The notes below the pieces were generated by a model that saw nothing but the letters and a program-made list of their open reading frames with translations, searched no databases and had not been told where the DNA came from. The position numbers were made by a program, and so were the translations under genes. A stretch of 64,000 bases of DNA from Octopus sinensis (taxonomy: Eukaryota). Shown one piece after another: positions 5,228-61,122 of the stretch. Position 1 is the first letter of the stretch; each line of letters starts with the position of its first letter. Location of the stretch: positions 992,001 through 1,056,000 of the forward strand of contig NC_043005.1 in the NCBI RefSeq assembly GCF_006345805.1, in the 5' to 3' direction.

Positions 5228-5281
<54 letters not shown>
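5228..5281. repeat. (TTA)18 microsatellite
   Basis: Direct reading. Confidence 0.97.
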
Positions 5282-7938: not shown

Positions 7939-9426
7939 AAAATGACTTGTAGTAATTATAATCATTTATACTCTCAGTTCAAATCCTGTTGAAGTTAATT
8001 TACTTTGCTTTTATCCTTTTGGAGTTCAAACAATAAGTGCCAATCAAATGCTACAGTTCTATCTCAAAATTTGTGGTCTTGTGCTAATGTTAGAAGTTAT
8101 TATTGTAAAAGTAATGGAGTAACAAAAACGTCTACCAAAATGTTCAGCGATATTTTATGATGTCTCTTCATAATATGAATTGAAATCTAAACATTTATCT
8201 GCTAGTGGAGAGGTTTCAATGTAACTTGTTCTCTGTAAACTTGTGTCTGTGTATTATGCAAGAAATTGGCATCATCCTAACTAACATCCTCTACCATTAA
8301 AAGAGGCTGAGAAAATATTTAAGGGCATCATTGAACAGTACTATATGCATTATGATATCCAATAGTCACTGTTATGCTTGTAAATTTAAACTGGGGTTAA
8401 TTTACCTTAACTGAGCAGAACTCAAAAAATAAATCAACTCTACCTGTTCTCTAATAAAACATTGCAATTGTAGCAGTTAAGTGGCCAGTTTTTAATGAAG
8501 TGAGTCTCAATAATTAACTAGAACCATTTCACCCAATTATCTTGTGAAAGGCATTAACATTGCAATTGTTTTCCCTCATCACCAATTTACTTAACTTATT
8601 ATCAGAAAAGATAGCAATACCATATTCAACAAAATGAAAAAAAATCTCAACTTTTAACGTAGCACTTGGTATTTTCAATTTTTGAAATTTTATACATCAC
8701 TGTTTTTTCAAAAAATTTTTCTTTCACATTTATATATCAATGTTAGCAAAGGTTCAGTTATTGTACAAATTTCAATATATGGTTCCTAACCAAACACTGC
8801 ATTTTAAAATTCTAGTGCTGAGTTTGGTAAATCAAATGGTGATCAGATATATTATCATTTGCAGTGAAACATTCTTGGCACATTAGCTGTTCTTTGTTGG
8901 ATTCATCCATTGACCCTTTATAGAGTCATCTTAGGGTACAGGAATAGCCCTGTTAGCTCAAATGTATGGCATGCGGGTAACTAATTGAATGGTTGGAGTT
9001 ATGTAAACTCATCTAGCATATCGGATTCAGTGGAATCCAATATTTTGCCATTTGATTACATTTCAGGCTGTAACCTGATTCAGTGTCACATCCATGATAT
9101 TAAATTTTTGGAGTCATCATCATCATCATCGTTTAACATCCGCTTTCCATGCTAGCATGGATTGGACGGTTTGACTGAGGGCTGGCGAACCAGATGGCTG
9201 CACCAGTTTTTTTTATCTTTCACAGCTAGAGGAAATCTTTGGAACAGAAAACATTTAACTCTGAAGTCAAGACTGATCCTAATTTTAAAAAGACTGGAGG
9301 TTTTAAAATAACATCATTGCAGTAGTAGTATTTGAACTTGGTGATTCAGATCTTATAGAAATTTAAGAGAATTACTTTAGCTCTAACATAATATGCCATT
9401 TCTCACCAACATATTTTTATACTTAC

Positions 9427-10298: not shown

Positions 10299-11287
10299 GA
10301 AGACGTATCTAAACAGATACGTCTTCAACCATCTTAACCCCTGACGGAGAAACATCATCTTTCTCAATCAAAGCCGGAATACTGCAGGGAGACACACTCG
10401 CCCCATTTCTCTTCATCATTGTCGTTGACTATGTGCTACATATGTCAATTGATACCATTTCTAGCAAGGGCTTTGAAATAAAACCTAGAAGTTCCAGATA
10501 CCCAGCTGAATACTTAACAGACACTGACTTTGCTGACGACATCGCTCTTATCAGTGATTCTCTCTCCAATGCCCAGTCTCTTTTACAATCTCTCGAACAA
10601 GCCTCAAATTGTGTAGGTCTTTACCTCAATGAGGCCAAGACTAAATATATAAACAAGTGCCTGTCCAACAGTGATTGCATCATCCATACTCTCAACAGTG
10701 CGCCTTTAAATATGGTTTCTGATTATAAATATCTTGGGTCATACATATCATCATCTGGAAAAGACTTTCTAACTAGAAAGGGTATGGCCTGGTCAGCCTG
10801 TAATGACATGCATAAGATCTGGTCATCAAATCTAAGTAGAGACTTCAAACTTGAAATCTTCAAAGCCACAGTCGGACCAATTCTACTATATGGCTCAGAA
10901 ACCTGGACGTTATCAAAGAAGCTTGAGAGGCGGTTGGATGGAACCTACACTCGCCTCCTTATGAGAGCTCAAAATCTCTCGTGGAAGCGTCATCCAACCA
11001 AAATGCAAATATATGGGAAACTACCACCTGTGTCATCTCTTGTGAAAGGTAGGAGAGTCCAGTTTGCTGGACATTGTTGTAGAGCTGAAAACGAGGCAAT
11101 TTCTACTCTTCTCCTCTGGAAGCCATCTACTCGCAATACCAGAGGGTGCACACTCTCCTACCCTGATATAATCTCCAGGGATACAGGCATCCAGCAACAG
11201 GACCTCCGTAATGCTATGATAGAGCGTGAAGTCTGGTGTAGCATGGTAAATTCCATTGTCTCGACCACGGTCGAACAATGATGATGA
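10299..11287 (+). mobile_element. 5'-truncated non-LTR retrotransposon (RTE/RTEX-like RT, open frame about 10310-11281)
   Basis: TPDGET, GILQGDTLAPFLF, DFADDIAL, KYLGS, LLYGSETW, QFAGHCCR; (TGA)n tail; 10-bp TSD TTGGGTGTTT at 10289-10298 and 11288-11297. Confidence 0.92.
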
Positions 11288-15954: not shown

Positions 15955-16835
15955 GAACAGCTCCTACCTCTGCTGGCAACTAAAGGCCTCTCAGTCAGGA
16001 CGAAAGGTGGATTGCATGATGCATGTGTGTGTGAAATACCATGCTACACAGCAGTGAAACATGGGCCATAAATGGTGAGGAAATGCGTAGGCTTGAAAGA
16101 AATGAAGCTAGCACGATCAGCATGAGAAGCATGAGATGTGGTGTGCAAGAGAGACGACTGTGCTGGGATGGCCATGTGGCGAGAATGGATGATGAAGACA
16201 GCTGTGTGAAGAAGTGCCACTCCCTAACTGTAGAAGGAACCTGTGTAAGAGGTAGACCCAGGAAGGCATGGGATGAGATGGTGAAGCATGACCTTTGAAC
16301 ATTGGGCTTCAAAGAGGCAATGATAGGAGAGAGGGACCTTTGGAGATATGCTGTGATTGAGAAGACCCAGCAACTAAAGTGAGATCGCAGGTACGCATGT
16401 CCGGCCCTGTTAAGAATACTCCTGAGGTGTCAGGTGATATGATATGTTTGAGAAGACCTGTTGAGTCAAGTGAAACCAATATTGTAGCTGGGGCCAGTGA
16501 CCCCTGGCTGGCTCCCATGCCGATAGCACGTAAAAAGCACCATCCAAACGTGGTCAATGCCAGGACCGCCTGACTGGCTCCCGTGTCAGTGGCATGTGAA
16601 AAGCACCATCTGAATGTATTCGATGCCAGGCTCATTTTACTGGCTCCTGTGCTGGTGGCATGTGAAAAGCACTCACTACACTCTCACAGTGGTTGGCGTT
16701 AGGAAGGGCATCCAGCTGTAGAAACATTGCCAGATCAGACTGGAACCTGGTGCAGCCATCTGGATCGCCAGACCTCAGTCAAACCGTCCAACCTATACCA
16801 CCATGGAAAATGGACGTTAAATGATGGTGATGATG
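15955..16835 (+). mobile_element. RTE-clade LINE 3' fragment with 3' UTR
   Basis: LLPLLATKGL, MLHSSETWA, RRLCWDGHVARMD, GRPRKAWDEMVKHDL, DLWRYAVIEK; three hairpin modules; GACGTTAAATGATG tail. Confidence 0.88.
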
Positions 16836-17547
16836 ATACACACACACACAATCAAACATTCGCATACATATTCATATACACCTATGCATGTTTGAGTGTA
16901 TCAATGTGTGTGCACACAAATGCTTGTTTACATCTTATAGATCAACAAAATCAGTAAAATATGTTTTCTTTTACTTTGAAAAGGAAATAAGGGTTTGCAA
17001 TAGAAAAGGCAGGTAAGGAAAAGGAAGAAAATGAAAGTGTATGCATAATCATTCACATAACATTTATATAAACATTATACGAACGATAATATTTTGAAAA
17101 TGAAAGTGTTTAATATTTAATTTCATATCATCATCATCGTTTAATGTCCGTTTTCCGTTTTAGCACGGGTTGGACGGTTCAACCAGGGTCTGGGAAACCA
17201 GGAGGCTGCACCAGGCTCCAGTCTGATCATATATATATATATATATATATATAATTGTACATATGTGTGTGCTAGAAAGAGAGAGTGAGGGAGAGGAATT
17301 GATAAAGTAAATACATTTTAAGCTTAAAAATTTGGGGTTTATTTCAATTAAAAGTGTGTTTGGAGCCAGGCCTTTAAATGCAGTTGCCTGTCACTGCCAT
17401 TCTCTCTGTTGTTTTATTCTTCCCTGCAAGCGTCACCGACAGGAGACTCTTTGCCTTCTATTATAAGTAAGATATCTACACATGTGAATGAATAGAGCTA
17501 TAAAAGTTAATGAAAGCGTAAATTTAATAAGGATCAAATGAGCTCAC

Positions 17548-19000: not shown

Positions 19001-19068
19001 ATTTACAAAGTTGGCATTTATATAGTCCCCATTTTGACTACCTTTTAATATCACTCGGGTCTGGTCAT
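19001..19068 (-). CDS. PTPN4: PTPN4-like exon: (Y)DQTRVILKGSQNGDYINANFVN
   Basis: ttttctag / gtaaga; 68 nt, phase 1-0; DYINAN motif. Confidence 0.96.
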
Positions 19069-19564
19069 CTAGAAAATAAAAAGTTAAAATGATTTTTAAG
19101 AAAGGAAGTCATAATACAAAATTTCAAGTATTTTCAATTCCCATGGTCTGTTAATATTTGAGTTTAATCTTTTCACAGAGAAACTCCATCTTTACATGTT
19201 GCAACCACACGATCACATTCTTCGATAATAACAAAAGCAAAACGAATTTCTGTGTGTCACACTTTGAACTCCTCTCTCAATGACACTTCTACTATTCCTC
19301 ATGTCGGGGTGAGAGTAATAGTAGGCATAAAGATGGTAATGGGATGATAGTAATAGTACTGAGCTGTAGCTGTGGTAGAGGTGGAGGCGACGGTAATGAT
19401 GGTGGTATGGTAGCCGAGGTGGTCAGGGATGATGGTGACAGTAAGTGATGTGAAAGGCAGAGGTGATGGTGGTGAAGTCAAAGATATTGATGGTGGCGGC
19501 ATCAGAAGTCTGAAAGGTGTGTGTATGGCAATTGTGGTGGTGATGGTGGTTTAAAACAATCAAC

Positions 19565-19599
<35 letters not shown>

Positions 19600-19609
19600 A
19601 AAACAAACG

Positions 19610-22600
19610 AGGAACTGCTTTCAAAATTTATCGTACAGAATACATTAAGTGTCATTGTAGGGCCCAGTGCCCAATGAAGAGCCTGCCACAGGAGCGAGCT
19701 AAAAAGCCACCCTATTGGGCAGCTTTTGAGATAGTAATAGAAATAAAATGAACAAGGAACTGCTTTCAAAATATATCGTACAGAATACATTAAGTGTCAT
19801 TGTAGGGCCCAGTGCCCAATGAAGAGCCTGCCACAGGAGCGAGCTAAAAAGCCACCCTATTGGGCAGCTTTTGAGATAGTAATAGAAATAAAATGAACAA
19901 GGAACTGCTTTCAAAATATATCGTACAGAATACATTAAGTGTCATTGTAGGGCCCAGTGCCCAATGAAGAGCCTGCCACAGGAGCGAGCTAAAAAGCCAC
20001 CTTATTGGGCAGCTTTTGAGATAGTAATAGAAATAAAATGAACAAGGAACTGCTTTCAAAATATATCGTACAGAATACATTAAGTGTCATTGTAGGGCCC
20101 AGTGCCCAATGAAGAGCCTGCCACAGGAGCGAGCTAAAAAGCCACCTTATTGGGCAGCTTTTGAGATAGTAATAGAAATAAAATGAACAAGGAACTGCTT
20201 TCAAAATATATCGTACAGAATACATTAAGTGTCATTGTAGGGCCCAGTGCCCAATGAAGAGCCTGCCACAGGAGCGAGCTAAAAAGCCACCCTATTGGGC
20301 AGCTTTTGAGATAGTAATAGAAATAAAATGAACAAGGAACTGCTTTCAAAATATATCGTACAGAATACATTAAGTGTCATTGTAGGGCCCAGTGCCCAAT
20401 GAAGAGCCTGCCACAGGAGCGAGCTAAAAAGCCACCTTATTGGGCAGCTTTTGAGATAGTAATAGAAATAAAATGAACAAGGAACTGCTTTCAAAATTTA
20501 TCGTACAGAATACATTAAGTGTCATTGTAGGGCCCAGTGCCCAATGAAGAGCCTGCCACAGGAGCGAGCTAAAAAGCCACCTTATTGGGCAGCTTTTGAG
20601 ATAGTAATAGAAATAAAATGAACAAGGAACTGCTTTCAAAATATATCGTACAGAATACATTAAGTGTCATTGTAGGGCCCAGTGCCCAATGAAGAGCCTG
20701 CCACAGGAGCGAGCTAAAAAGCCACCTTATTGGGCAGCTTTTGAGATAGTAATAGAAATAAAATGAACAAGGAACTGCTTTCAAAATATATCGTACAGAA
20801 TACATTAAGTGTCATTGTAGGGCCCAGTGCCCAATGAAGAGCCTGCCACAGGAGCGAGCTAAAAAGCCACCCTATTGGGCAGCTTTTGAGATAGTAATAG
20901 AAATAAAATGAACAAGGAACTGCTTTCAAAATATATCGTACAGAATACATTAAGTGTCATTGTAGGGCCCAGTGCCCAATGAAGAGCCTGCCACAGGAGC
21001 GAGCTAAAAAGCCACCCTATTGGGCAGCTTTTGAGATAGTAATAGAAATAAAATGAACAAGGAACTGCTTTCAAAATATATCGTACAGAATACATTAAGT
21101 GTCATTGTAGGGCCCAGTGCCCAATGAAGAGCCTGCCACAGGAGCGAGCTAAAAAGCCACCTTATTGGGCAGCTTTTGAGATAGTAATAGAAATAAAATG
21201 AACAAGGAACTGCTTTCAAAATTTATCGTACAGAATACATTAAGTGTCATTGTAGGGCCCAGTGCCCAATGAAGAGCCTGCCACAGGAGCGAGCTAAAAA
21301 GCCACCTTATTGGGCAGCTTTTGAGATAGTAATAGAAATAAAATGAACAAGGAACTGCTTTCAAAATATATCGTACAGAATACATTAAGTGTCATTGTAG
21401 GGCCCAGTGCCCAATGAAGAGCCTGCCACAGGAGCGAGCTAAAAAGCCACCTTATTGGGCAGCTTTTGAGATAGTAATAGAAATAAAATGAACAAGGAAC
21501 TGCTTTCAAAATATATCGTACAGAATACATTAAGTGTCATTGTAGGGCCCAGTGCCCAATGAAGAGCCTGCCACAGGAGCGAGCTAAAAAGCCACCCTAT
21601 TGGGAAGCTTTTGAGATAGTAATAGAAATAAAATGAACAAGGAACTGCTTTCAAAATATATCGTACAGAATACATTAAGTGTCATTGTAGGGCCCAGTGC
21701 CCAATGAAGAGCCTGCCACAGGAGCGAGCTAAAAAGCCACCTTATTGGGCAGCTTTTGAGATAGTAATAGAAATAAAATGAACAAGGAACTGCTTTCAAA
21801 ATATATCGTACAGAATACATTAAGTGTCATTGTAGGGCCCAGTGCCCAATGAAGAGCCTGCCACAGGAGCGAGCTAAAAAGCCACCCTATTGGGCAGCTT
21901 TTGAGATAGTAATAGAAATAAAATGAACAAGGAACTGCTTTCAAAATATATCGTACAGAATACATTAAGTGTCATTGTAGGGCCCAGTGCCCAATGAAGA
22001 GCCTGCCACAGGAGCGAGCTAAAAAGCCACCCTATTGGGCAGCTTTTGAGATAGTAATAGAAATAAAATGAACAAGGAACTGCTTTCAAAATATATCGTA
22101 CAGAATACATTAAGTGTCATTGTAGGGCCCAGTGCCCAATGAAGAGCCTGCCACAGGAGCGAGCTAAAAAGCCACCTTATTGGGCAGCTTTTGAGATAGT
22201 AATAGAAATAAAATGAACAAGGAACTGCTTTCAAAATATATCGTACAGAATACATTAAGTGTCATTGTAGGGCCCAGTGCCCAATGAAGAGCCTGCCACA
22301 GGAGCGAGCTAAAAAGCCACCCTATTGGGCAGCTTTTGAGATAGTAATAGAAATAAAATGAACAAGGAACTGCTTTCAAAATATATCGTACAGAATACAT
22401 TAAGTGTCATTGTAGGGCCCAGTGCCCAATGAAGAGCCTGCCACAGGAGCGAGCTAAAAAGCCACCTTATTGGGCAGCTTTTGAGATAGTAATAGAAATA
22501 AAATGAACAAGGAACTGCTTTCAAAATATATCGTACAGAATACATTAAGTGTCATTGTAGGGCCCAGTGCCCAATGAAGAGCCTGCCACAGGAGCGAGCT

Positions 22601-25600
22601 AAAAAGCCACCCTATTGGGCAGCTTTTGAGATAGTAATAGAAATAAAATGAACAAGGAACTGCTTTCAAAATATATCGTACAGAATACATTAAGTGTCAT
22701 TGTAGGGCCCAGTGCCCAATGAAGAGCCTGCCACAGGAGCGAGCTAAAAAGCCACCTTATTGGGCAGCTTTTGAGATAGTAATAGAAATAAAATGAACAA
22801 GGAACTGCTTTCAAAATATATCGTACAGAATACATTAAGTGTCATTGTAGGGCCCAGTGCCCAATGAAGAGCCTGCCACAGGAGCGAGCTAAAAAGCCAC
22901 CTTATTGGGCAGCTTTTGAGATAGTAATAGAAATAAAATGAACAAGGAACTGCTTTCAAAATTTATCGTACAGAATACATTAAGTGTCATTGTAGGGCCC
23001 AGTGCCCAATGAAGAGCCTGCCACAGGAGCGAGCTAAAAAGCCACCTTATTGGGCAGCTTTTGAGATAGTAATAGAAATAAAATGAACAAGGAACTGCTT
23101 TCAAAATATATCGTACAGAATACATTAAGTGTCATTGTAGGGCCCAGTGCCCAATGAAGAGCCTGCCACAGGAGCGAGCTAAAAAGCCACCTTATTGGGC
23201 AGCTTTTGAGATAGTAATAGAAATAAAATGAACAAGGAACTGCTTTCAAAATTTATCGTACAGAATACATTAAGTGTCATTGTAGGGCCCAGTGCCCAAT
23301 GAAGAGCCTGCCACAGGAGCGAGCTAAAAAGCCACCTTATTGGGCAGCTTTTGAGATAGTAATAGAAATAAAATGAACAAGGAACTGCTTTCAAAATATA
23401 TCGTACAGAATACATTAAGTGTCATTGTAGGGCCCAGTGCCCAATGAAGAGCCTGCCACAGGAGCGAGCTAAAAAGCCACCCTATTGGGCAGCTTTTGAG
23501 ATAGTAATAGAAATAAAATGAACAAGGAACTGCTTTCAAAATATATCGTACAGAATACATTAAGTGTCATTGTAGGGCCCAGTGCCCAATGAAGAGCCTG
23601 CCACAGGAGCGAGCTAAAAAGCCACCTTATTGGGCAGCTTTTGAGATAGTAATAGAAATAAAATGAACAAGGAACTGCTTTCAAAATATATCGTACAGAA
23701 TACATTAAGTGTCATTGTAGGGCCCAGTGCCCAATGAAGAGCCTGCCACAGGAGCGAGCTAAAAAGCCACCTTATTGGGCAGCTTTTGAGATAGTAATAG
23801 AAATAAAATGAACAAGGAACTGCTTTCAAAATTTATCGTACAGAATACATTAAGTGTCATTGTAGGGCCCAGTGCCCAATGAAGAGCCTGCCACAGGAGC
23901 GAGCTAAAAAGCCACCTTATTGGGCAGCTTTTGAGATAGTAATAGAAATAAAATGAACAAGGAACTGCTTTCAAAATATATCGTACAGAATACATTAAGT
24001 GTCATTGTAGGGCCCAGTGCCCAATGAAGAGCCTGCCACAGGAGCGAGCTAAAAAGCCACCTTATTGGGCAGCTTTTGAGATAGTAATAGAAATAAAATG
24101 AACAAGGAACTGCTTTCAAAATTTATCGTACAGAATACATTAAGTGTCATTGTAGGGCCCAGTGCCCAATGAAGAGCCTGCCACAGGAGCGAGCTAAAAA
24201 GCCACCTTATTGGGCAGCTTTTGAGATAGTAATAGAAATAAAATGAACAAGGAACTGTTTCAAAATATATCGTACAGAATACATTAAGTGTCATTGTAGG
24301 GCCCAGTGCCCAATGAAGAGCCTGCCACAGGAGCGAGCTAAAAAGCCACCCTATTGGGCAGCTTTTGAGATAGTAATAGAAATAAAATGAACAAGGAACT
24401 GCTTTCAAAATATATCGTACAGAATACATTAAGTGTCATTGTAGGGCCCAGTGCCCAATGAAGAGCCTGCCACAGGAGCGAGCTAAAAAGCCACCCTATT
24501 GGGCAGCTTTTGAGATAGTAATAGAAATAAAATGAACAAGGAACTGCTTTCAAAATATATCGTACAGAATACATTAAGTGTCATTGTAGGGCCCAGTGCC
24601 CAATGAAGAGCCTGCCACAGGAGCGAGCTAAAAAGCCACCCTATTGGGCAGCTTTTGAGATAGTAATAGAAATAAAATGAACAAGGAACTGCTTTCAAAA
24701 TATATCGTACAGAATACATTAAGTGTCATTGTAGGGCCCAGTGCCCAATGAAGAGCCTGCCACAGGAGCGAGCTAAAAAGCCACCTTATTGGGCAGCTTT
24801 TGAGATAGTAATAGAAATAAAATGAACAAGGAACTGCTTTCAAAATATATCGTACAGAATACATTAAGTGTCATTGTAGGGCCCAGTGCCCAATGAAGAG
24901 CCTGCCACAGGAGCGAGCTAAAAAGCCACCTTATTGGGCAGCTTTTGAGATAGTAATAGAAATAAAATGAACAAGGAACTGCTTTCAAAATATATCGTAC
25001 AGAATACATTAAGTGTCATTGTAGAGCCCAGTGCCCAATGAAGAGCCTGCCACAGGAGCGAGCTAAAAAGCCACCTTATTGGGCAGCTTTTGAGATAGTA
25101 ATAGAAATAAAATGAACAAGGAACTGCTTTCAAAATATATCGTACAGAATACATTAAGTGTCATTGTAGGGCCCAGTGCCCAATGAAGCCCTGCCACAGG
25201 AGCGAGCTAAAAAGCCACCCTATTGGGCAGCTTTTGAGATAGTAATAGAAATAAAATGAACAAGGAACTGCTTTCAAAATATATCGTACAGAATACATTA
25301 AGTGTCATTGTAGGGCCCAGTGCCCAATGAAGAGCCTGCCACAGGAGCGAGCTAAAAAGCCACCTTATTGGGCAGCTTTTGAGATAGTAATAGAAATAAA
25401 ATGAACAAGGAACTGCTTTCAAAATATATCGTACAGAATACATTAAGTGTCATTGTAGGGCCCAGTGCCCAATGAAGAGCCTGCCACAGGAGCGAGCTAA
25501 AAAGCCACCCTATTGGGCAGCTTTTGAGATAGTAATAGAAATAAAATGAACAAGGAACTGCTTTCAAAATATATCGTACAGAATACATTAAGTGTCATTG

Positions 25601-28600
25601 TAGGGCCCAGTGCCCAATGAAGAGCCTGCCACAGGAGCGAGCTAAAAAGCCACCCTATTGGGCAGCTTTTGAGATAGTAATAGAAATAAAATGAACAAGG
25701 AACTGCTTTCAAAATATATCGTACAGAATACATTAAGTGTCATTGTAGGGCCCAGTGCCCAATGAAGAGCCTGCCACAGGAGCGAGCTAAAAAGCCACCC
25801 TATTGGGCAGCTTTTGAGATAGTAATAGAAATAAAATGAACAAGGAACTGCTTTCAAAATATATCGTACAGAATACATTAAGTGTCATTGTAGGGCCCAG
25901 TGCCCAATGAAGAGCCTGCCACAGGAGCGAGCTAAAAAGCCACCTTATTGGGCAGCTTTTGAGATAGTAATAGAAATAAAATGAACAAGGAACTGCTTTC
26001 AAAATATATCGTACAGAATACATTAAGTGTCATTGTAGGGCCCAGTGCCCAATGAAGAGCCTGCCACAGGAGCGAGCTAAAAAGCCACCCTATTGGGCAG
26101 CTTTTGAGATAGTAATAGAAATAAAATGAACAAGGAACTGCTTTCAAAATATATCGTACAGAATACATTAAGTGTCATTGTAGGGCCCAGTGCCCAATGA
26201 AGAGCCTGCCACAGGAGCGAGCTAAAAAGCCACCTTATTGGGCAGCTTTTGAGATAGTAATAGAAATAAAATGAACAAGGAACTGCTTTCAAAATATATC
26301 GTACAGAATACATTAAGTGTCATTGTAGGGCCCAGTGCCCAATGAAGAGCCTGCCACAGGAGCGAGCTAAAAAGCCACCTTATTGGGCAGCTTTTGAGAT
26401 AGTAATAGAAATAAAATGAACAAGGAACTGCTTTCAAAATATATCGTACAGAATACATTAAGTGTCATTGTAGGGCCCAGTGCCCAATGAAGAGCCTGCC
26501 ACAGGAGCGAGCTAAAAAGCCACCCTATTGGGCAGCTTTTGAGATAGTAATAGAAATAAAATGAACAAGGAACTGCTTTCAAAATTTATCGTACAGAATA
26601 CATTAAGTGTCATTGTAGGGCCCAGTGCCCAATGAAGAGCCTGCCACAGGAGCGAGCTAAAAAGCCACCCTATTGGGCAGCTTTTGAGATAGTAATAGAA
26701 ATAAAATGAACAAGGAACTGCTTTCAAAATATATCGTACAGAATACATTAAGTGTCATTGTAGGGCCCAGTGCCCAATGAAGAGCCTGCCACAGGAGCGA
26801 GCTAAAAAGCCACCTTATTGGGCAGCTTTTGAGATAGTAATAGAAATAAAATGAACAAGGAACTGCTTTCAAAATATATCGTACAGAATACATTAAGTGT
26901 CATTGTAGGGCCCAGTGCCCAATGAAGAGCCTGCCACAGGAGCGAGCTAAAAAGCCACCTTATTGGGCAGCTTTTGAGATAGTAATAGAAATAAAATGAA
27001 CAAGGAACTGCTTTCAAAATATATCGTACAGAATACATTAAGTGTCATTGTAGGGCCCAGTGCCCAATGAAGAGCCTGCCACAGGAGCGAGCTAAAAAGC
27101 CACCTTATTGGGCAGCTTTTGAGATAGTAATAGAAATAAAATGAACAAGGAACTGCTTTCAAAATATATCGTACAGAATACATTAAGTGTCATTGTAGGG
27201 CCCAGTGCCCAATGAAGAGCCTGCCACAGGAGCGAGCTAAAAAGCCACCCTATTGGGCAGCTTTTGAGATAGTAATAGAAATAAAATGAACAAGGAACTG
27301 CTTTCAAAATATATCGTACAGAATACATTAAGTGTCATTGTAGGGCCCAGTGCCCAATGAAGAGCCTGCCACAGGAGCGAGCTAAAAAGCCACCTTATTG
27401 GGCAGCTTTTGAGATAGTAATAGAAATAAAATGAACAAGGAACTGCTTTCAAAATATATCGTACAGAATACATTAAGTGTCATTGTAGGGCCCAGTGCCC
27501 AATGAAGAGCCTGCCACAGGAGCGAGCTAAAAAGCCACCTTATTGGGCAGCTTTTGAGATAGTAATAGAAATAAAATGAACAAGGAACTGCTTTCAAAAT
27601 ATATCGTACAGAATACATTAAGTGTCATTGTAGGGCCCAGTGCCCAATGAAGAGCCTGCCACAGGAGCGAGCTAAAAAGCCACCCTATTGGGCAGCTTTT
27701 GAGATAGTAATAGAAATAAAATGAACAAGGAACTGCTTTCAAAATATATCGTACAGAATACATTAAGTGTCATTGTAGGGCCCAGTGCCCAATGAAGAGC
27801 CTGCCACAGGAGCGAGCTAAAAAGCCACCCTATTGGGCAGCTTTTGAGATAGTAATAGAAATAAAATGAACAAGGAACTGCTTTCAAAATATATCGTACA
27901 GAATACATTAAGTGTCATTGTAGGGCCCAGTGCCCAATGAAGAGCCTGCCACAGGAGCGAGCTAAAAAGCCACCCTATTGGGCAGCTTTTGAGATAGTAA
28001 TAGAAATAAAATGAACAAGGAACTGCTTTCAAAATATATCGTACAGAATACATTAAGTGTCATTGTAGGGCCCAGTGCCCAATGAAGAGCCTGCCACAGG
28101 AGCGAGCTAAAAAGCCACCCTATTGGGCAGCTTTTGAGATAGTAATAGAAATAAAATGAACAAGGAACTGCTTTCAAAATATATCGTACAGAATACATTA
28201 AGTGTCATTGTAGGGCCCAGTGCCCAATGAAGAGCCTGCCACAGGAGCGAGCTAAAAAGCCACCCTATTGGGCAGCTTTTGAGATAGTAATAGAAATAAA
28301 ATGAACAAGGAACTGCTTTCAAAATATATCGTACAGAATACATTAAGTGTCATTGTAGGGCCCAGTGCCCAATGAAGAGCCTGCCACAGGAGCGAGCTAA
28401 AAAGCCACCTTATTGGGCAGCTTTTGAGATAGTAATAGAAATAAAATGAACAAGGAACTGCTTTCAAAATATATCGTACAGAATACATTAAGTGTCATTG
28501 TAGGGCCCAGTGCCCAATGAAGAGCCTGCCACAGGAGCGAGCTAAAAAGCCACCTTATTGGGCAGCTTTTGAGATAGTAATAGAAATAAAATGAACAAGG

Positions 28601-29499
28601 AACTGCTTTCAAAATATATCGTACAGAATACATTAAGTGTCATTGTAGGGCCCAGTGCCCAATGAAGAGCCTGCCACAGGAGCGAGCTAAAAAGCCACCC
28701 TATTGGGCAGCTTTTGAGATAGTAATAGAAATAAAATGAACAAGGAACTGCTTTCAAAATATATCGTACAGAATACATTAAGTGTCATTGTAGGGCCCAG
28801 TGCCCAATGAAGAGCCTGCCACAGGAGCGAGCTAAAAAGCCACCCTATTGGGCAGCTTTTGAGATAGTAATAGAAATAAAATGAACAAGGAACTGCTTTC
28901 AAAATATATCGTACAGAATACATTAAGTGTCATTGTAGGGCCCAGTGCCCAATGAAGAGCCTGCCACAGGAGCGAGCTAAAAAGCCACCCTATTGGGCAG
29001 CTTTTGAGATAGTAATAGAAATAAAATGAACAAGGAACTGCTTTCAAAATATATCGTACAGAATACATTAAGTGTCATTGTAGGGCCCAGTGCCCAATGA
29101 AGAGCCTGCCACAGGAGCGAGCTAAAAAGCCACCTTATTGGGCAGCTTTTGAGATAGTAATAGAAATAAAATGAACAAGGAACTGCTTTCAAAATATATC
29201 GTACAGAATACATTAAGTGTCATTGTAGGGCCCAGTGCCCAATGAAGAGCCTGCCACAGGAGCGAGCTAAAAAGCCACCCTATTGGGCAGCTTTTGAGAT
29301 AGTAATAGAAATAAAATGAACAAGGAACTGCTTTCAAAATATATCGTACAGAATACATTAAGTGTCATTGTAGGGCCCAGTGCCCAATGAAGAGCCTGCC
29401 ACAGGAGCGAGCTAAAAAGCCACCTTATTGGGCAGCTTTTGAGATAGTAATAGAAATAAAATGAACAAGGAACTGCTTTCAAAATATATCGTACAGAAT
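19610..29499. repeat. Intronic satellite array: 68 x 145 bp plus a 32-bp partial unit
   Basis: Unit aggaactgctttcaaaatatatcgtacagaatacattaagtgtcattgtagggcccagtgcccaatgaagagcctgccacaggagcgagctaaaaagccacc(c/t)tattgggcagcttttgagatagtaatagaaataaaatgaaca; 68x145 - 2 (two 1-bp deletions) + 32 = 9890 bp, matching the span. Confidence 0.99.
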
Positions 29500-30449
29500 G
29501 ATGACATTGATTTTACTTGTTTTCCAAGATGCACAAAACTTCAAAATCTAAAACTCTTCAAGTGTGTTTGTCATGTTTTCCTTCAAAAATCTGCAGCATG
29601 AAACTGTAATCCCATTTTTCTCTAAATTTTTATCTCATGAACAATGTAAAGCATCAAAGAAACTCTTTTGTAAATTTCTCATGTAGCTCTTCATCATCAT
29701 GCTTGTAATTTTTTCCCCAAGATGGCACAGGATGATAGCCAAATATATTCACCACAGACAGATCTCTGCTATCTCAGCTGTGGGAACAACAAATTCAAAC
29801 TAAATGTCACTAATACAGCCAGAACAAATTACCAATAGCAGAAAAGCTTGTATAACTGCTGAGGTTCAAGCATTTACTCCACGTCAAATTTGAAAATGGT
29901 GAGGCACTAATTAACACTGCACGACCACTGTTTTGGCATGGGTTCTACAACTGGATGCCCTTCCTTAATTTACAGAGTGTACTAGGTGCTTTTTACATGG
30001 TACTAGCAATCCTCTTTGCAATATTCTTTCTACTTCTCAAAAAAAAAAAAAGAGAAAGAAAGAAAGAAAGAAGAGAAAATGTATCAATAGATACATACAA
30101 GTATGTGTATATATGTTGGTATTACAACACACACATACAAATACTCAACAGACCACATATTGCCAGTCACATTTTTAAAATTCTTTTGTCAATATTAGCT
30201 TTGGTTGGATGGTTGGGTCATTTCTGGTATTTAATCAATTATTAGAGCAGAAACTGTTTTTGTTTCCAAGTCTAATATGAAAGCAGTAAAGCATCTCTCA
30301 GATCAACAGACCAAAACAATCAGAGATAATTTGTCATGACTAAAATTACAAGCCTTCATATGCCACTACTATCTGTTTAGTACACACTGAAAATATCTAA
30401 TTTCACTTAACATTACTAGATAATTCTCGTTGAAATACATATAAAGGCA

Positions 30450-31972
30450 GGGTTCTAGGAAAGTTCACCACAAACATTTTTGAAGCAGGAAAATTTGCCT
30501 TGGAATTTTGGCTGTAGAAAAGTTTGTCGCAAAAAAGAAATGAGTTGTCCCCCTTGGTGTATAATTGTTTCAACCAATAAGAAGTGGGTAAAGCAATTGG
30601 ATCTTGTTAATCAGAAAATCAGCCCCCTTTAAATTTGCTTGGATTGTTTTCAATTTTGGTGTATCGTAAATTAAAGAATTTGATGTTATTTGGAATTAAA
30701 TTTGGGAAATTTTAGCCAATCAACAGACGGTGAGGCATTAACAGCTTGTTACCATGACAACCGCACGTTTTGTTGATTCTTCACACCATGACATTCAATT
30801 TACCTGTGTTTTGTTTTAATAAAAATTTATAGTTATCAATTAGAATTTTATTGTAGACTTTTGCGTCGGATGTCTTAATATTTTACATATTTTCCATATA
30901 TTTCGTCAACCACCCCTTCCTCTCGGAGTGGTTGGCGTTAGGAAGGGCATCCAGCTGTAGAAACACTGCCAGATCTGACCGGCCTGGTGCAGCCTTCGGG
31001 CTCCCCAGACCCCAGTTGAACCGTCCAACCCATGCTAGCATGGAAAACGGATGCTAAATGATGATGATGATGATGATGATGTTTCTCTCTTTACTTTTTC
31101 CGTGTTTTTCTGTTTTTTATCCACATTCAATCCATTTAATTGTATCACTCTGAAGGAAATTTTGAAAACAGAGGTGGATGCAGTAAATTATTTGAAAGAA
31201 AAGGGTGTTAGCCCTAAAAAACGAAAAAAGAAAGAGGTGCAGTAAATCTAGGTCCAACATGAGTAAGAAAGTGATTCATGGGAATTTGCACTGGCGGTAC
31301 ACTAGCAATGGTTGCAACGAGTGCCTTTCAGAATGAGCCCCAGGTCAGGCCAGAATGAGCCATTCTGTATTTTTATTGAAGATGTAGGACAACATTATTT
31401 AATGTGTCCTTCATTTTTAGAATATTAGAGCATAGTGTGAGGGAAATTTGGCTGTTATTTCTAGCAAATTGAACAACCACACAGAGATTACTTCATCGGT
31501 TCATTTGCTGATGTGTATAAGTAAACAAAAACTAAGGGAAATGGATCTTCATTTGTTTCTAGGATGATCATTCCAGTTGTATGATCAACTGAACTGGTTA
31601 CACACATCAACCTTCAAAGGATGAAAGGCAAAGTCCACCTAGGCGCAATCTGAACATTTCCAATATGTTTTTTTCACTTTATTTCCCATCTATCTTATAA
31701 ACAAAGTTAAGATCATCAACTAATTTCACAGCACCTCTGCTAGTTCCCACTTGGCAGACACCATTGCAATGGGTTGACCACACAAAGAATATTGTCAAAT
31801 GAATAAAGAAATTGCTTTACTCCTTCTTATTGCTTGAAATAATAATATACCGGCACGGGGGTGGGGGGATGGAGCCCTCTTTTGTTTTGCAGTAAAATTT
31901 CCTATGCAGCGAACTTTTCTACAGCTAAAAACCCTGAGGTGAATTTTTCTGCAGCGAACTTTCTGGATACAG
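30450..31972 (+). mobile_element. Degenerate Merlin/ISXO2-like DNA transposon with 8-bp TSD
   Basis: TAAAGGCA at 30442-30449 and 31973-31980; imperfect subterminal inverted repeats (GCTGTAGAAAAGTT / AACTTTTCTACAGC); remnant ILKTEVDAVNYLKEKGV..RCSKSRSNM..HWRY..GC. Confidence 0.6.
30915..31080 (+). mobile_element. RTE 3'-tail fragment nested in the Merlin-like relic
   Basis: GGAGTGGTTGGCGTTAGGAAGGGCATCCAGCTGTAG...AACCGTCCAACCCATGCTAGCATGGAAAACGG...(GAT)n. Confidence 0.85.
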
Positions 31973-32515
31973 TAAAGGCACTTATGGTAGCTTTAAGATT
32001 AAAAAAGGATTGAGCTATTGACAAAATAGTCATGAGTTCAAACTTTGTTGCAGCCACTGGCAAAGTATATTACTCACTGTACCAATATTTTCAGGTTAAG
32101 CAATGGCTTTGTGTGCATTTACCATTTCAATAATGTCAGAGAGATTGCAATTCTAGACTTGGAGCTATTCCTGTCTATTTTTAATAAGTTCATTTCTACG
32201 TTTTGCAGTTATTAGTAAAATGAGTGTCAGTGTAACAGCAAGGGATTGAAACTCATTTGAATCTAAAGGCAATGTTAGTAGTACTTATGTGAGACAAGGA
32301 AGCCTCTATTTATGACTAGAAATAGCAGCAGAAACTCTTCCTCAAACCAAACCCCACCATCTTAAACAAGTAAGGACATGTTGAATAATGGTAGTCCTAG
32401 TTAGCTCTAAAGACTGGATGCTCATAACTAAAATGTCTTTGGTGATGTGTTTCTTCAAATAGTTTCATCTGGGGTTAAACAAGAACAAACATTTAACCTT
32501 GGAAGACTGAAAAAG

Positions 32516-32761
32516 CCAAACCTCTCTCTGTCTGGATACTGTTTTAAGGTATTTAAGGTATTTAAGGTATTTAAGGTATTTAAACCAAACCTCTCTCTGT
32601 CTGGATACTGTTTTAAGGTATTTAAGGTATTTAAGGTATTTAAGGTATTTAAACCAAACCTCTCTCTGTCTGGATACTGTTTTAAGGTATTTAAGGTATT
32701 TAAGGTATTTAAGGTATTTAAACCAAACCTCTCTCTGTCTGGATACTGTTTTAAGGTATTT
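32516..32761. repeat. Nested minisatellite: 69-bp unit containing 4 x AAGGTATTT; 3 units plus 39 bp
   Basis: Identical copies of ccaaacctctctctgtctggatactgtttt(aaggtattt)4aaa. Confidence 0.97.
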
Positions 32762-32806
32762 TCCATAAAAACAAGTGAGTAAACAATATATTAGAACAAC
32801 ACTTAC

Positions 32807-32897
32807 AGGGTGACACATCTCTGTATCTGTTCTTTGAGATGTTGGCGGGTAACCTTGCTGCATTCATTGTCAGGCCATGCTTTTTTCTATAAAGTTG
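32807..32897 (-). CDS. PTPN4: PTPN4-like exon (PTP start, KNRY motif): QLYRKKHGLTMNAARLPANISKNRYRDVSP
   Basis: ttcaacag / gtaagt; 91 nt, phase 0-1; KNRYRD pTyr-recognition loop. Confidence 0.96.

Positions 32898-33735: not shown

Positions 33736-33824
<89 letters not shown>
33736..33824. repeat. Compound (GT)n(GA)n microsatellite
   Basis: Direct reading. Confidence 0.95.

Positions 33825-38546: not shown

Positions 38547-38591
<45 letters not shown>
38547..38591. repeat. (GT)n microsatellite
   Basis: Direct reading. Confidence 0.95.
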
Positions 38592-44088: not shown

Positions 44089-44773
44089 ATCTAATGAGAC
44101 ATGGCCATTGCTTATTCTATACAACACTTATTCATGACACTTTCCTCCAGTGGTACTGACAATACAGATCTGGGCCCCATTCATTGACTCTGAGTAAAGT
44201 AGGATGAGAGAATTATGGCTATAAGTTAATCAGCAATTGGTGTATTTATTCAATTCATTACAGTGTAAGCAATTATCAAAAGTAATGAGTATTATTTCTC
44301 TCTGTTGTCATAAAACCAAAGCAAAAATGGAGAAAGTCATTATTGAAGTAGAATGGCTACACGTAATTAAACTACATGTAATTAGACTAGTTCAACATAA
44401 TTAATCTATGTCTCTTGTATAAAGCAAAATAATTCAAAAGAGTTCTTATTTTCCATATCTAATTTTCGTATGTTATAAACATGGTCCATGTATCATATAA
44501 TTTGGAAAATACTGGATCAGTGTTGAATAAATAAATTAAACAATAACTGTGGGTTGGGTTTTCTACCAGAAATTTATATTTGAAGGAAGCTTTTTATTTT
44601 TTTTTCAGACCATGTGAAATTTTTCCCGTAAAAAAACAAAAAACAAAATAAAAACAGAGGTGAATCCAGCATGATTGGAAGTTAGAGATGAAACAAGCTG
44701 CTGCTGACAATATAGTACGATTCTCTACCCTGCTAAGATGCTTAGGATTAGCATGAAACACAATACTACATAC

Positions 44774-44863
44774 CTTCACATTAAACCCAAATTTCCCTTG
44801 TTCATCCGGTTTCATTTTGATGGTAACTAATCCTTGACTGTCAGTATAACCATTGCCATTTGA
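44774..44863 (-). CDS. PTPN4: PTPN3/PTPN4-like phosphatase exon (start of PDZ): SNGNGYTDSQGLVTIKMKPDEQGKFGFNVK
   Basis: ttttag acceptor and gtatgt donor; 90 nt, phase 0-0; MKPDEQGKFGFNVK resembles the PTPN4 PDZ start as I recall it (MKPDENGRFGFNVK). Confidence 0.93.
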
Positions 44864-49385: not shown

Positions 49386-49389
<4 letters not shown>

Positions 49390-51058: not shown

Positions 51059-51104
<46 letters not shown>

Positions 51105-55825: not shown

Positions 55826-56275
55826 ATCATCATCATCATCGTTTAACGTCTGTTTTTCCGTGCTAGCACAGGTTGGACGGTTCAACCGGGGTCTGGGAAG
55901 CCAGTAGGCTGCACCAGACTCCAATCTGATCTGGCAGTGTTTCTACAGCTGGATGCCCTTCCTAATGTCAACCACTCAGTGAGTGTAGTGGGTGCTTTTT
56001 ACGTGCCACCAGCACAGGTGCCAGGGGAGGCTGGCAGCGGCTATGATCGGTTGGTGCTTTTTATGTGCCACCAGCACAGAAGCCAGTCAAGGCGGCGCTG
56101 GCATCAGCCACATTCGGATGGTGCTTTTTATGTGCCACCGGCACAGGTATCACAACTACTGTTTCCATTTGATATTTATTTCGATGTTTATGTACTTGAC
56201 TCAATAGGTCCCTCAAGCACAGTAGGTCATGTGCCAGCGGCACAGAAGCCAGCCAAGGCAGCGCTGGCACCGGCC
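55826..56275 (-). mobile_element. RTE LINE 3' UTR fragment with repeated hairpin modules
   Basis: Multiple GTGCC(A/G)CC(A/G)GCAC modules on the plus strand; CCGTCCAACC tail on the minus strand. Confidence 0.8.
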
Positions 56276-57492: not shown

Positions 57493-57529
57493 GATATATA
57501 TACATACATATATATAAATATATACATAC

Positions 57530-61031: not shown

Positions 61032-61039
<8 letters not shown>

Positions 61040-61122
<83 letters not shown>
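61040..61122. repeat. (GAAA)n(GA)n microsatellite
   Basis: Direct reading. Confidence 0.95.

What the first reader, a model, noticed from the sequence alone, without database searches (positions are those of the whole stretch)
19610..29499. 9.9-kb, near-perfect 145-bp satellite filling most of an intron of a signalling phosphatase gene
Seen: 68 units plus 32 bp take up about 72% of intron 19069-32806, with flanking exons frame-compatible across it. Apart from two recurrent sites there are only a few private changes (C>A near 21605, 1-bp deletions near 24257 and 25188, G>A at 25025). The unit matches nothing else in the window. Inference: a very recent expansion or strong concerted evolution. 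Being intronic, it is copied into every pre-mRNA, so it is a candidate for a length-polymorphic cis-regulator, a local heterochromatin or small-RNA source, or a multivalent RNA scaffold. This is the most unexplained structure in the window.
Basis: partly seen in the sequence, partly recalled or inferred. Interest (0 to 1): 0.75.

Follow-up and report, generated by a model that had tools for sequence, protein, structure and literature searches.

The report
Young 145-bp satellite array in a phosphatase intron
A 9.9-kb run of 68 almost identical 145-bp copies really does fill 72% of one intron of a PTPN3/4-type phosphatase gene, but everything testable points to an ordinary, recently amplified non-coding tandem repeat rather than a new functional element.

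Summary
A 145-bp tandem array lies at 19606-29499, with 68 units plus 36 bp and 99% matches. It fills 72.0% of intron 19069-32806 of a minus-strand PTPN3/PTPN4 orthologue. The intron splits the catalytic-domain motif NRYRDVSP|YD.

Only two sites recur (position 107 C/T, 31:37; position 23 T in 8 units), and there are five private lesions. The unit matches no Rfam family, tRNA, protein family or other sequence in the window, and nothing in the public collections I could scan. Neither strand folds better than shuffled sequence. The flanks are unique, with no transposon hallmarks.

In a related animal the orthologous intron is about 0.6 kb and has no satellite, so the array is a lineage-specific gain.

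The common C/T variant is arranged like a random shuffle, with no higher-order repeat. That fits a collapsed or polished consensus, or short-tract gene conversion. Reads are needed to decide.

The only canonical AATAAA lies on the strand antisense to the gene, which fits a tolerated passenger.

Verdict: a real, young, satellite-type intronic tandem array. It is a new member of a known kind, with no evidence for the proposed regulatory or RNA-scaffold roles. Interest is low to moderate.

The parts
19606..29499 (.). 145-bp tandem array: 68 units plus a 36-bp partial unit. Consensus (+ strand): AACAAGGAACTGCTTTCAAAATATATCGTACAGAATACATTAAGTGTCATTGTAGGGCCCAGTGCCCAATGAAGAGCCTGCCACAGGAGCGAGCTAAAAAGCCACCTTATTGGGCAGCTTTTGAGATAGTAATAGAAATAAAATG
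   Evidence: TRF; unit-by-unit table. There are 7 distinct sequences among the 66 full-length units, with counts 30, 26, 6, 1, 1, 1, 1.
19069..32806 (-). Host intron: 13,738 bp, phase 1, GT...AG. It would be 3,844 bp without the array. Neighbouring introns of the same gene are about 1-3.4 kb.
   Evidence: Splice junctions read directly; exon map by tblastn with P0001.
32807..32897 (-). Upstream exon of the PTPN3/4 orthologue: QLYRKKHGLTMNAARLPANISKNRYRDVSP(Y). This is PTP motif 1.
   Evidence: PDB matches
19001..19068 (-). Downstream exon: (Y)DQTRVILKGSQNGDYINANFVN
19565..19599 (.). (GA)n microsatellite abutting the left edge of the array, 6 bp before unit 1. On the gene-sense strand it lies just 3' of the array.
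   Evidence: TRF; sequence
19847..19872 (-). One example (unit 2) of the per-unit hairpin. It forms only on the gene-sense RNA: AAAAGCUGCCC-AAUA-GGGUGGCUUUU followed by a further U. It has 11 pairs including 2 G.U in units with C at position 107, and 10 pairs in units with T. Variable site 107 is the loop-closing pair.
   Evidence: Fold; stem test, 17 of 1000 dinucleotide shuffles reach 11 pairs; it is the cause of the weak Phe_leader terminator hits. Marginal, and possibly chance.
25025..25025 (.). G>A in unit 38, which removes that unit's ApaI site and gives the single 290-bp spacing.
22651..24389 (.). Units 22-27 and 28-33: a possible 6-unit (870-bp) block duplication. Both blocks carry the same two-site haplotype pattern, including the rare T23 variant twice.
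   Evidence: context test 235 of 5000 shuffles, p about 0.05; the generic tandem test is not significant

Best explanation
This is a genuine, evolutionarily young, non-coding tandem array of satellite type. The monomer is of nucleosome length. The array was gained in this lineage inside a pre-existing, ancient intron of a PTPN3/PTPN4 (PTP-MEG) orthologue.

A single 145-bp sequence was amplified to about 68 copies. The mechanism was either unequal sister-chromatid exchange or replication slippage, or rolling-circle amplification followed by reinsertion. The event was recent enough that only about 0.06% private differences have accumulated.

The array is transcribed passively as part of the pre-mRNA, in the orientation that lacks a canonical poly(A) signal, and is removed with the intron. 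Its only shown effect is to lengthen that intron 3.6-fold. It is most likely a length-polymorphic, selectively near-neutral passenger.

Shown: structure, homogeneity, position, orientation, absence from a relative's orthologous intron, and absence of known RNA, protein or transposon signatures. Inferred: recency, amplification mechanism and neutrality.
For: - Array and variants.
- Exact intron and intact flanking exons with consensus splice sites.
- The host gene's PTP domain is complete, with all catalytic motifs present across nine exon pieces.
- The orthologous intron sits at the same codon (RD[I/V]SP|YD) in contigs L001-L003 of a related animal. There it is only about 0.58 kb and has no similarity to the unit.
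- No Rfam family at gathering score anywhere in the window, and nothing better than E 0.46 in the array. No tRNA.
- No Pfam family or homologue for the array's 78-aa ORF.
- Fold energies are not different from shuffles.
- Flanks are unique in the window, with sharp junctions and no significant partial units.
- SINE copies in the same intron are 70-87% identical to their relatives, against more than 99.4% between array units.
- Both CpGs of the unit are intact in the consensus, and no unit carries a change at either CpG.
- AATAAA occurs once per unit on the + strand only, antisense to the gene. The sense strand has none.
- Intronic and euchromatic satellite-like arrays are a described class: PMC5844308, PMC4675708, PMC7492417, PMC7719264.
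Against: - I could not search the host genome, so I do not know whether the unit is locus-specific or a copy of a genome-wide satellite.
- The roughly 50:50 C/T variant at position 107 is arranged like a random shuffle (34 runs against 34.7 +/- 4.1 expected). Simple unequal exchange would be expected to leave clustered or periodic variants. Only one possible 6-unit block duplication is seen.
- The copy number is non-integer (68.25) and the edges are sharp. This argues mildly against simple in-place duplication of a resident 145-bp segment.
- With 68 copies at over 99.4% identity, the array is longer and much cleaner than the euchromatic arrays described in oyster (29 monomers at most, 8.5-21% diversity; PMC7492417). 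It is an extreme member of its class, or the assembly has cleaned it.
- Neutrality is assumed, not tested.
Confidence: 0.55

Rival explanations
1. The array is a euchromatic outpost of a genome-wide satellite family, for example a pericentromeric one. A homogeneous multimer, already homogenised elsewhere, was excised as extrachromosomal circular DNA and inserted into the intron at a break next to the (GA)n tract. This is the mechanism proposed for TCAST multimers in Tribolium and for alpha-satellite copies in human euchromatin.
For: - Sharp junctions with no significant flank homology, a non-integer copy number and no degenerate edge units.
- A microsatellite directly abuts one edge.
- The high homogeneity resembles heterochromatic arrays, and homogeneous euchromatic multimers are explained this way in PMC5844308.
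- The monomer is of nucleosome length.
Against: - No second copy or fragment in the other 54 kb of the window.
- No match to 25-33-mers of the unit in the metagenome, viral or prokaryote-genome collections, or in paper full text.
- No word-sharing ORF in the 5.8-billion-protein collection.
- All of these are weak tests, because the host species itself appears to be absent from those collections. The best same-gene hits are only about 80% identical.
Confidence: 0.2
2. Part of the picture is an assembly or polishing artefact. The locus holds a real tandem repeat, but the copy number is misestimated, or the near-perfect identity and the random C/T pattern come from consensus building. Two routes would do this: a collapsed diploid consensus of two haplotype arrays, one with C and one with T at position 107, or short-read polishing with multi-mapped reads, which erases rare variants and assigns common ones at random.
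For: - The position-107 variant is 31:37 and arranged indistinguishably from random, with no periodicity at lags 1-20. That is what per-unit majority calls at a heterozygous or multi-mapped site would give.
- Two of the five private lesions involve 1-bp deletions, a typical long-read error type.
- Only 7 distinct unit sequences exist among 66 full units.
Against: - There are no Ns or gaps.
- At 9.9 kb the array is within the span of ordinary long reads.
- Private substitutions sit at irregular positions, and there is a possible 6-unit block duplication marked by the rare T23 variant. Both suggest that real positional information was kept.
- Other tandem repeats in the window are also perfect, so high identity is not peculiar to this array.
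Confidence: 0.15
3. The array is a functional cis-element of the phosphatase gene. Options are a length-dependent modulator of transcription elongation or splicing, a nucleator of local heterochromatin or small RNAs (TCAST1-like), or a multivalent RNA platform presenting 68 copies of the sense-strand hairpin plus U-run to an RNA-binding protein.
For: - An 11-pair hairpin followed by U5 forms only on the gene-sense RNA, because it needs two G.U pairs. It is reached by only 17 of 1000 shuffles.
- The orientation avoids sense-strand AATAAA.
- The array ends 537 nt from the 3' splice site.
- Precedents exist for satellite repeats modulating nearby genes (PMC5844308 citing Feliciello 2015; PMC12653875).
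Against: - No conservation evidence at all. The relative's orthologous intron lacks it.
- The whole-unit fold is not better than shuffles on either strand.
- No Rfam family.
- The hairpin's p value is marginal after allowing for two strands and two variants. The commoner T variant weakens it, and one private change (21605) breaks a pair.
- Orientation alone has a 50% prior.
- Extreme youth means selection has had little time to act.
Confidence: 0.07
4. The array is the expanded central tandem-repeat region of a non-autonomous mobile element (Helentron/HINE, 'pearl'-type or MITE-like), which typically carries 140-180-bp repeats next to a microsatellite.
For: - The monomer length of 145 bp falls within the 140-180 bp range typical of such elements.
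- A microsatellite directly abuts one end, which resembles the Cg_HINE architecture in PMC7492417.
Against: - The flanks are unique in a window that contains at least 10 copies of other repeats.
- There are no terminal or subterminal inverted repeats or palindromes beyond chance-level 14-21-nt matches, and no target-site duplication.
- 68 monomers at over 99% identity is far outside the at most 29 monomers and 8.5-21% diversity reported for such elements (PMC7492417).
- The adjacent repeat is a dinucleotide, not the mostly 4-nt (range 3-8 nt) motifs described there.
Confidence: 0.05

Closest known systems
Euchromatic, gene-associated satellite-like tandem repeats of Tribolium castaneum (Cast/TCAST families; PMC4675708, PMC5844308)
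   Same: Monomers of roughly nucleosome length, tandem arrays in euchromatic gene regions and enriched in introns, non-coding, no consistent flank motifs. Rolling-circle or eccDNA spread is proposed. Homogeneous multimers are interpreted as recent arrivals and are copy-number polymorphic.
   Different: Those families are multi-locus by definition, and their dispersed copies are 10-20% diverged. Most are single repeats or short multimers. Here only one locus is known, with 68 copies and over 99.4% identity. Whether other loci exist could not be tested.
Helentron-borne satellite-like arrays of the Pacific oyster (Cg_HINE; PMC7492417)
   Same: 140-180-bp monomers, arrays in or near genes, and a microsatellite adjoining the array.
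   Different: Cg_HINE arrays have conserved transposon flanks with subterminal inverted repeats and a 3' palindrome, at most 29 monomers (mean under 5) and 8.5-21% diversity. None of these flank features was found here, and this array is far longer and cleaner.
Satellite-containing gigantic introns of Drosophila Y-linked fertility genes kl-3 and kl-5 (PMC6508621)
   Same: Tandem satellite DNA makes up most of an intron of a functional gene and has to be transcribed through.
   Different: Those are megabase-scale arrays of simple 5-7-bp satellites in testis-specific genes, with a dedicated expression programme. This is 9.9 kb of a complex 145-bp unit in a broadly conserved signalling gene.
Human intronic VNTRs and macrosatellites, and alpha-satellite copies dispersed in euchromatin (PMC7719264, PMC8744678)
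   Same: Intronic tandem arrays that are length-polymorphic and sometimes associated with expression differences. Insertions are lineage-specific and datable by comparing orthologous loci.
   Different: The sequences are unrelated. Dispersed alpha-satellite copies are mostly single repeats or short arrays derived from a known centromeric family. No parent family is known here.

Membership tests
Satellite-type tandem repeat (satDNA-like array) | Head-to-tail tandem copies of a monomer of 100 bp or more | tested here: met
   Period 145, 68.2 copies, 99% matches; spacings 145 x65
Satellite-type tandem repeat (satDNA-like array) | Non-coding: no protein or structured-RNA gene in the unit | tested here: met
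   The 78-aa ORF has no Pfam family and no homologue. No Rfam family, no tRNA, and fold z scores are not significant.
Satellite-type tandem repeat (satDNA-like array) | Family abundant in the genome, at many loci or in heterochromatic blocks (classical satDNA sense) | not testable with these tools
   The host genome is not searchable here. There is only one locus in 64 kb, and no hits in the collections scanned.
Satellite-type tandem repeat (satDNA-like array) | Intra-array homogeneity higher than that of dispersed repeats (concerted evolution or recent amplification) | tested here: met
   Mean pairwise difference 0.56%, or about 0.06% excluding the two recurrent sites, against 13-30% for SINE copies
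Transposon-borne central tandem repeats (Helentron/HINE, MITE-like) | Conserved, repeated flanking segments with terminal or subterminal inverted repeats, or a 3' palindrome | tested here: not met
   Flanks 19070-19605 and 29500-29927 are unique in the window. Only chance-level inverted matches of 14-21 nt were found. A 64-kb window is a limited test.
Transposon-borne central tandem repeats (Helentron/HINE, MITE-like) | Microsatellite adjoining the repeat array | tested here: inconclusive
   (GA)n at 19565-19599 abuts the array. It is a dinucleotide rather than the mostly 4-nt (range 3-8 nt) motifs described in PMC7492417, and GA runs are common throughout this window.
Tandem arrays of RNA genes or ribozyme-bearing satellites (5S, snRNA, SL RNA, hammerhead satellites) | The unit matches the covariance model of an RNA family | tested here: not met
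   No match at gathering score in the window. The best sub-threshold hit has E 0.46 and is to a bacterial leader terminator hairpin.
Gene-modulating euchromatic satellites (TCAST1 type) | Repeat-derived siRNA and H3K9me3 spreading that changes expression of the neighbouring gene | not testable with these tools
   This needs small-RNA, chromatin and expression data from the host.
Satellite-filled gigantic introns (Drosophila kl-3/kl-5 type) | Intron expanded to 100-kb or Mb scale by satellite DNA | tested here: not met
   The intron is 13.7 kb, of which 9.9 kb is array.
PTPN3/PTPN4 (PTP-MEG) phosphatase, the host gene | Class I PTP catalytic domain with the NRYRDVSP, WPDHGVP and [10 protein letters not shown] motifs, closest to PTPN4/PTPN3 | tested here: met
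   Motifs read in exons. The best PDB matches are PTPN4 2i75 (E 2.8e-78) and PTPN3 (E 2e-68), ahead of receptor PTPs. Named homologues are PTPN3/4/ptpmeg.
PTPN3/PTPN4 (PTP-MEG) phosphatase, the host gene | N-terminal FERM and central PDZ domains | tested here: inconclusive
   A PDZ-like exon piece (GLVTIKMKPDEQGKFGFNVK) lies at 44597-44863 on the minus strand, but the fragment is too short for Pfam. The FERM exons would lie beyond the window.

The most novel reading that the evidence does not exclude
The array is not a passenger but a young, lineage-specific regulatory module of the phosphatase gene. Its 68 sense-strand hairpin-plus-U-run units, or the array's chromatin, would act in a copy-number-dependent way on elongation, splicing or local silencing. 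Array length would then tune PTPN3/4 dosage between individuals.
Probability: 0.05. Interest if true: 0.6.

Novelty: new member of a known kind. Interest (0 to 1): 0.25.

Why it matters
As it stands, it matters mainly as a caution and a marker. It is a clean example of how a conserved gene's intron can grow 3.6-fold in one step through tandem amplification. It is probably also a highly length-polymorphic locus, useful for genotyping.

It is a good test case for assembly quality in tandem repeats as well. The random C/T pattern predicts either haplotype mixing or short-tract gene conversion.

It would matter more if the unit proved to be the seed or an offshoot of a genome-wide satellite, which would catch satellite birth or dispersal in the act. 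It would also matter more if copy number correlated with phosphatase expression.

Tried and rejected
- **Known RNA gene or ribozyme satellite: rejected.** Rfam at gathering score (whole window) and at E up to 10 (array) gave nothing credible. ARAGORN found nothing.
- **Pol III/SINE-like unit: rejected.** By eye the unit has an A-box-like GGGCCCAGTGC (2 mismatches) and a poor B-box-like GGAGCGAGCTA (4 mismatches). It has no similarity to the window's SINE family and no tRNA-like hit, so I dropped it.
- **Stable RNA structure of the whole unit: rejected.** z = -0.11 (sense) and -1.05 (antisense).
- **Nucleosome-positioning ~10-bp AA/TT periodicity: not present** (611 of 2000 shuffles).
- **Coding potential: rejected.** The 78-aa minus-strand ORFs follow from the low A content of that strand (5 against 9-10 stops per frame per 435 nt). 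They have no Pfam match, no homologue and no exact record.
- **Higher-order repeat: none.** Autocorrelation at lags 1-20 is flat, the runs test gives p about 0.5, and the longest repeated haplotype substrings are not significant.
- **Origin from flanking sequence: not supported.** Junction alignments are not significant. The in-register match of the GA-rich left flank to the unit's purine-rich tail (16 of 21) is explained by composition.
- **Transposon flanks, TIRs or TSD: not found**.
- **Species identification: failed.** Neither the PTP exons nor the LINE reverse transcriptase found a same-species or same-genus protein. The best matches were about 80% per exon and 73% respectively. The host is an invertebrate animal that I could not name.
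- **External copies of the unit: none.** Two metagenome scans, two viral scans, one prokaryote-genome scan and one full-text search were all empty. These are weak negatives, because the host taxon seems to be absent from those collections.
Full report
**1. Is it there?**

Yes. Tandem Repeats Finder reports a single array at 19606-29499: period 145, 68.2 copies, 99% matches, no indels at its resolution, score 19473. That is by far the strongest repeat in the window.

An anchor-motif scan gives 65 spacings of exactly 145 bp, one of 144 bp, and one of 289 bp where the anchor itself carries a deletion.

Cutting the array into units gives 66 units of 145 bp, two of 144 bp and a final 36-bp partial unit.

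- The last is a 1-bp deletion plus a substitution (GAAGAGCC>GAAGCCC).
- The two recurrent sites are unit position 107 (C in 31 units, T in 37) and position 23 (T in 8 units).
- The 66 full-length units comprise only 7 distinct sequences, with counts 30, 26, 6, 1, 1, 1, 1. Mean pairwise difference is 0.56%, nearly all of it from the two recurrent sites.
- GGGCCC occurs once per unit: 67 sites, spaced 145 x63, 144 x2 and 290 x1, with only four other sites in 64 kb.

**2. Where is it?**

The gene is on the minus strand.

- Reading the reverse complement, the upstream exon (32897-32807) ends ...KNRYRDVSP with donor CCCT|GTAAGT.
- The downstream exon (19068-19001) starts after TTTTCTAG| and reads (Y)DQTRVILKGSQNGDYINANFVN.
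The array makes up 72.0% of it.
- The joined exons match the PTPN4 catalytic domain best (PDB 2i75, E 2.8e-78), then PTPN3 (E about 2e-68), ahead of receptor PTPs. Named database relatives are PTPN3/PTPN4/ptpmeg.
- tblastn with the closest homologue (P0001) maps nine exon pieces from 33988 down to 5979, with every catalytic motif intact (motifs).
- Neighbouring introns are about 1-3.4 kb. Without the array this one would be 3.8 kb.
- In the sense direction the array begins 3.3 kb after the donor and ends 537 nt before the acceptor.

**3. What is the unit?**

Nothing known.

- No Rfam family reaches its gathering score anywhere in the window.
- With permissive settings, the array's only hits (E 0.46 or worse) are to a bacterial leader whose terminator hairpin resembles a hairpin plus T-run in the unit.
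- There are no tRNA-like genes.
- Neither strand of the unit folds better than dinucleotide shuffles: z = -0.11 for the gene-sense strand and -1.05 for the other.
- The 78-aa ORFs on the minus strand have no Pfam family, no exact record and no word-sharing protein among 5.8 billion. They exist because that strand is A-poor and so has few stop codons.
- There is no ~10-bp AA/TT periodicity.
- Outside the array the window has no significant match to the unit (blastn word 7, best E 0.18; nhmmer none).

**4. Flanks and junctions**

- The immediate flanks (19070-19605 and 29500-29927) are unique in the window.
- The rest of the intron holds two copies of a SINE-like family (29928-30008 and 30920-31081), which has at least 10 copies in the window at 70-87% identity.
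- Neither junction shows a significant degenerate partial unit. Inverted repeats near the junctions are at chance level. I see no target-site duplication.
- A (GA)n tract (19565-19599) abuts the left edge.
- The edges are therefore sharp and the copy number is non-integer (68.25).
- This argues mildly against simple in-place duplication of a resident 145-bp segment. It is compatible with insertion of a pre-formed multimer, or with later boundary deletion.

**5. Arrangement of the variants**

This is the one feature I consider unexplained.

- The C/T variant at position 107 is close to 50:50. Its order along the array cannot be told apart from a random shuffle: 34 runs against 34.7 +/- 4.1 expected.
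- Autocorrelation is flat for lags 1-20, so there is no higher-order repeat.
- Combining both sites, units 22-27 and 28-33 share the pattern 'aacacb', which includes the rare T23 variant twice. That hints at one 870-bp block duplication, but the support is marginal: the context test gives 235 of 5000 shuffles, and the generic tests are not significant.
- A common variant scattered at random through an otherwise identical array has two possible sources:
  - (a) Consensus building. This could be a collapsed diploid consensus in which one haplotype array carries C and the other T. It could also be polishing with multi-mapped short reads, which erases rare variants as well and so exaggerates homogeneity.
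  - (b) Pervasive short-tract gene conversion.
- Unequal crossing-over alone should leave clusters or periodicity.
- This cannot be resolved from the sequence. Single-molecule reads would settle it.

**6. Comparison with a relative**

- A protein hit from the PTP search (P0043) led to genomic contigs L001-L003 from metagenome assemblies of an unnamed animal. Its exons are about 80% identical to ours.
- The same intron exists there at the same codon (RDISP|YD). It is only about 0.58 kb, and no part of those loci resembles the unit.
- So the intron position is old and the array is a lineage-specific gain.
- I could not identify the host species. Neither the PTP exons nor a 446-aa LINE reverse-transcriptase ORF found a same-genus protein.
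- For that reason the empty searches for the unit in the metagenome, viral and prokaryote collections and in paper full text are weak negatives.

**7. Age (inference)**

- Excluding the two recurrent sites, there are about 4 substitutions and 2 single-base deletions in 9,894 bp, or about 4-6 x 10^-4 per site.
- Assume a star-like expansion and a typical invertebrate mutation rate of 1-5 x 10^-9 per site per generation. The rate is my assumption from general knowledge, not measured for this species.
- That corresponds to roughly 10^5 generations, give or take several-fold.
- Sequencing errors would make the array younger still, whereas ongoing homogenisation would allow it to be older.
- Both CpGs of the unit are intact in the consensus, and no unit carries a change at either CpG.

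**8. Consequences for the gene**

- The canonical poly(A) hexamer AATAAA occurs once per unit, but only on the + strand, antisense to the gene. The sense strand has only AATAAG. The pre-mRNA is therefore spared 68 canonical poly(A) signals. That fits a tolerated orientation, although the prior for either orientation is 50%.
- The best sense-strand 5' splice-site-like sequence is weak (AAG|GTGGCT).
- A hairpin of 11 contiguous pairs forms only on the gene-sense RNA, because it needs two G.U pairs: AAAAGCUGCCC-AAUA-GGGUGGCUUUU, followed by a further U. Only 17 of 1000 shuffles reach this length.
  - Variable site 107 is its loop-closing pair, so T-variant units have 10 pairs.
  - After allowing for two strands and two variants this is marginal. 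The stem is also too short for a miRNA-type precursor.
  - I record it but do not build on it.

**9. Comparison with what is known**

Satellite-like arrays in euchromatin and introns are well described.

- Tribolium Cast/TCAST families are enriched in introns. Their homogeneous multimers are read as recent arrivals spread through circular intermediates (PMC4675708, PMC5844308).
- Oyster Helentron-borne arrays have 140-180-bp monomers next to a microsatellite (PMC7492417).
- Human alpha-satellite copies occur in euchromatin and introns (PMC7719264).
- At the extreme are the satellite-filled megabase introns of the Drosophila Y-linked genes (PMC6508621).
- Our array fits this class in monomer size, non-coding nature, position and lack of junction motifs.
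- It fails the tests for transposon-borne arrays (no repeated or structured flanks) and for RNA-gene or ribozyme arrays.
- It is unusual within its class only in degree. It has 68 copies at over 99.4% identity, against at most 29 monomers and 8.5-21% diversity in oyster. The assembly caveat applies to that comparison.

**10. Verdict**

- The inference of recent expansion or homogenisation is reasonable and is supported by the comparison with the relative's intron.
- The functional suggestions have no sequence support and remain untested.
- The best explanation (confidence about 0.55) is a real, young, near-neutral satellite-type array riding in an ancient intron.
- The main alternatives concern its origin (an offshoot of a genome-wide satellite, about 0.2) and its fidelity (assembly or polishing effects, about 0.15).
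- A regulatory role is possible but unlikely on present evidence (about 0.05-0.07).
- Novelty: a new member of a known kind. Interest: 0.25.

Noticed in passing
window 32516-32761: A second perfect (100%) tandem repeat in the same intron: 69 bp x 3.6 copies, each holding a nested 9-bp repeat (TTTAAGGTA x 4.6). It starts only about 45 nt downstream of the exon's donor site in the sense direction. This is another very recent tandem duplication in this intron.
   Followed up: partly
window 30920-31081, 29928-30008, 16681-16837, 49388-49550, 55826-55983, 57346-57495, 4207-4349, 9114-9206, 17123-17228: A SINE-like dispersed repeat of about 160 bp with at least 10 copies in the window at 70-87% identity. 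It is much older than the array. Some copies adjoin degenerate 66-67-bp tandem repeats (16493-16672, 55991-56146). The family was not identified.
   Followed up: partly
window 49721-51058 (-) and 10313-11278 (+): Two LINE-type reverse-transcriptase ORFs. One is 446 aa with RVT_1 plus a weak PHD finger, and the other is 322 aa with RVT_1. The second lies inside another intron of the phosphatase gene. The best database relatives are only 50-73% identical and give no host species.
   Followed up: partly
L001 8334-8912; L002 5193-5782; L003 1119-1694: In an unnamed related animal (ENA metagenome assemblies) the orthologous phase-1 intron at RDISP|YD is only about 0.58 kb. Exons e-g of our gene are fused there into one 351-nt exon. 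Intron positions are therefore partly conserved, while intron sizes differ more than 20-fold.
   Followed up: partly
window 19847-19872 and the same position in every unit (unit positions 97-122): A hairpin plus U-run that is specific to the gene-sense strand, with 11 pairs including 2 G.U. It contains variable site 107 and the private change at 21605. It is marginally unusual (17 of 1000 shuffles) and is the cause of the weak bacterial-terminator Rfam hits.
   Followed up: yes
window 19278-19297 and 30273-30287: Each flank holds one short inverted match to the unit. One is 20 nt at 80% to unit positions 33-52, and the other is 15 nt at 87% to unit positions 11-25. Both are at chance level (E about 7.6 for the 11-mer seed), but they are symmetric enough to be worth noting.
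   Followed up: partly
window 33753-33824, 61033-61122, 38547-38591, 51061-51104, 5228-5281 and others: Many long, perfect di- and trinucleotide microsatellites: (GA)36, (AGAG)22, (GT)22, (AT)22, (TTA)18. This points to a genome, or an assembly, in which simple repeats are abundant and very clean.
   Followed up: no
window 19300-19560: The 260 bp to the left of the (GA)n tract is a degenerate GGT/GAT-rich low-complexity stretch (GGTGATGGTGGT-like). The array therefore sits at the edge of an already repeat-prone, purine-rich segment.
   Followed up: no
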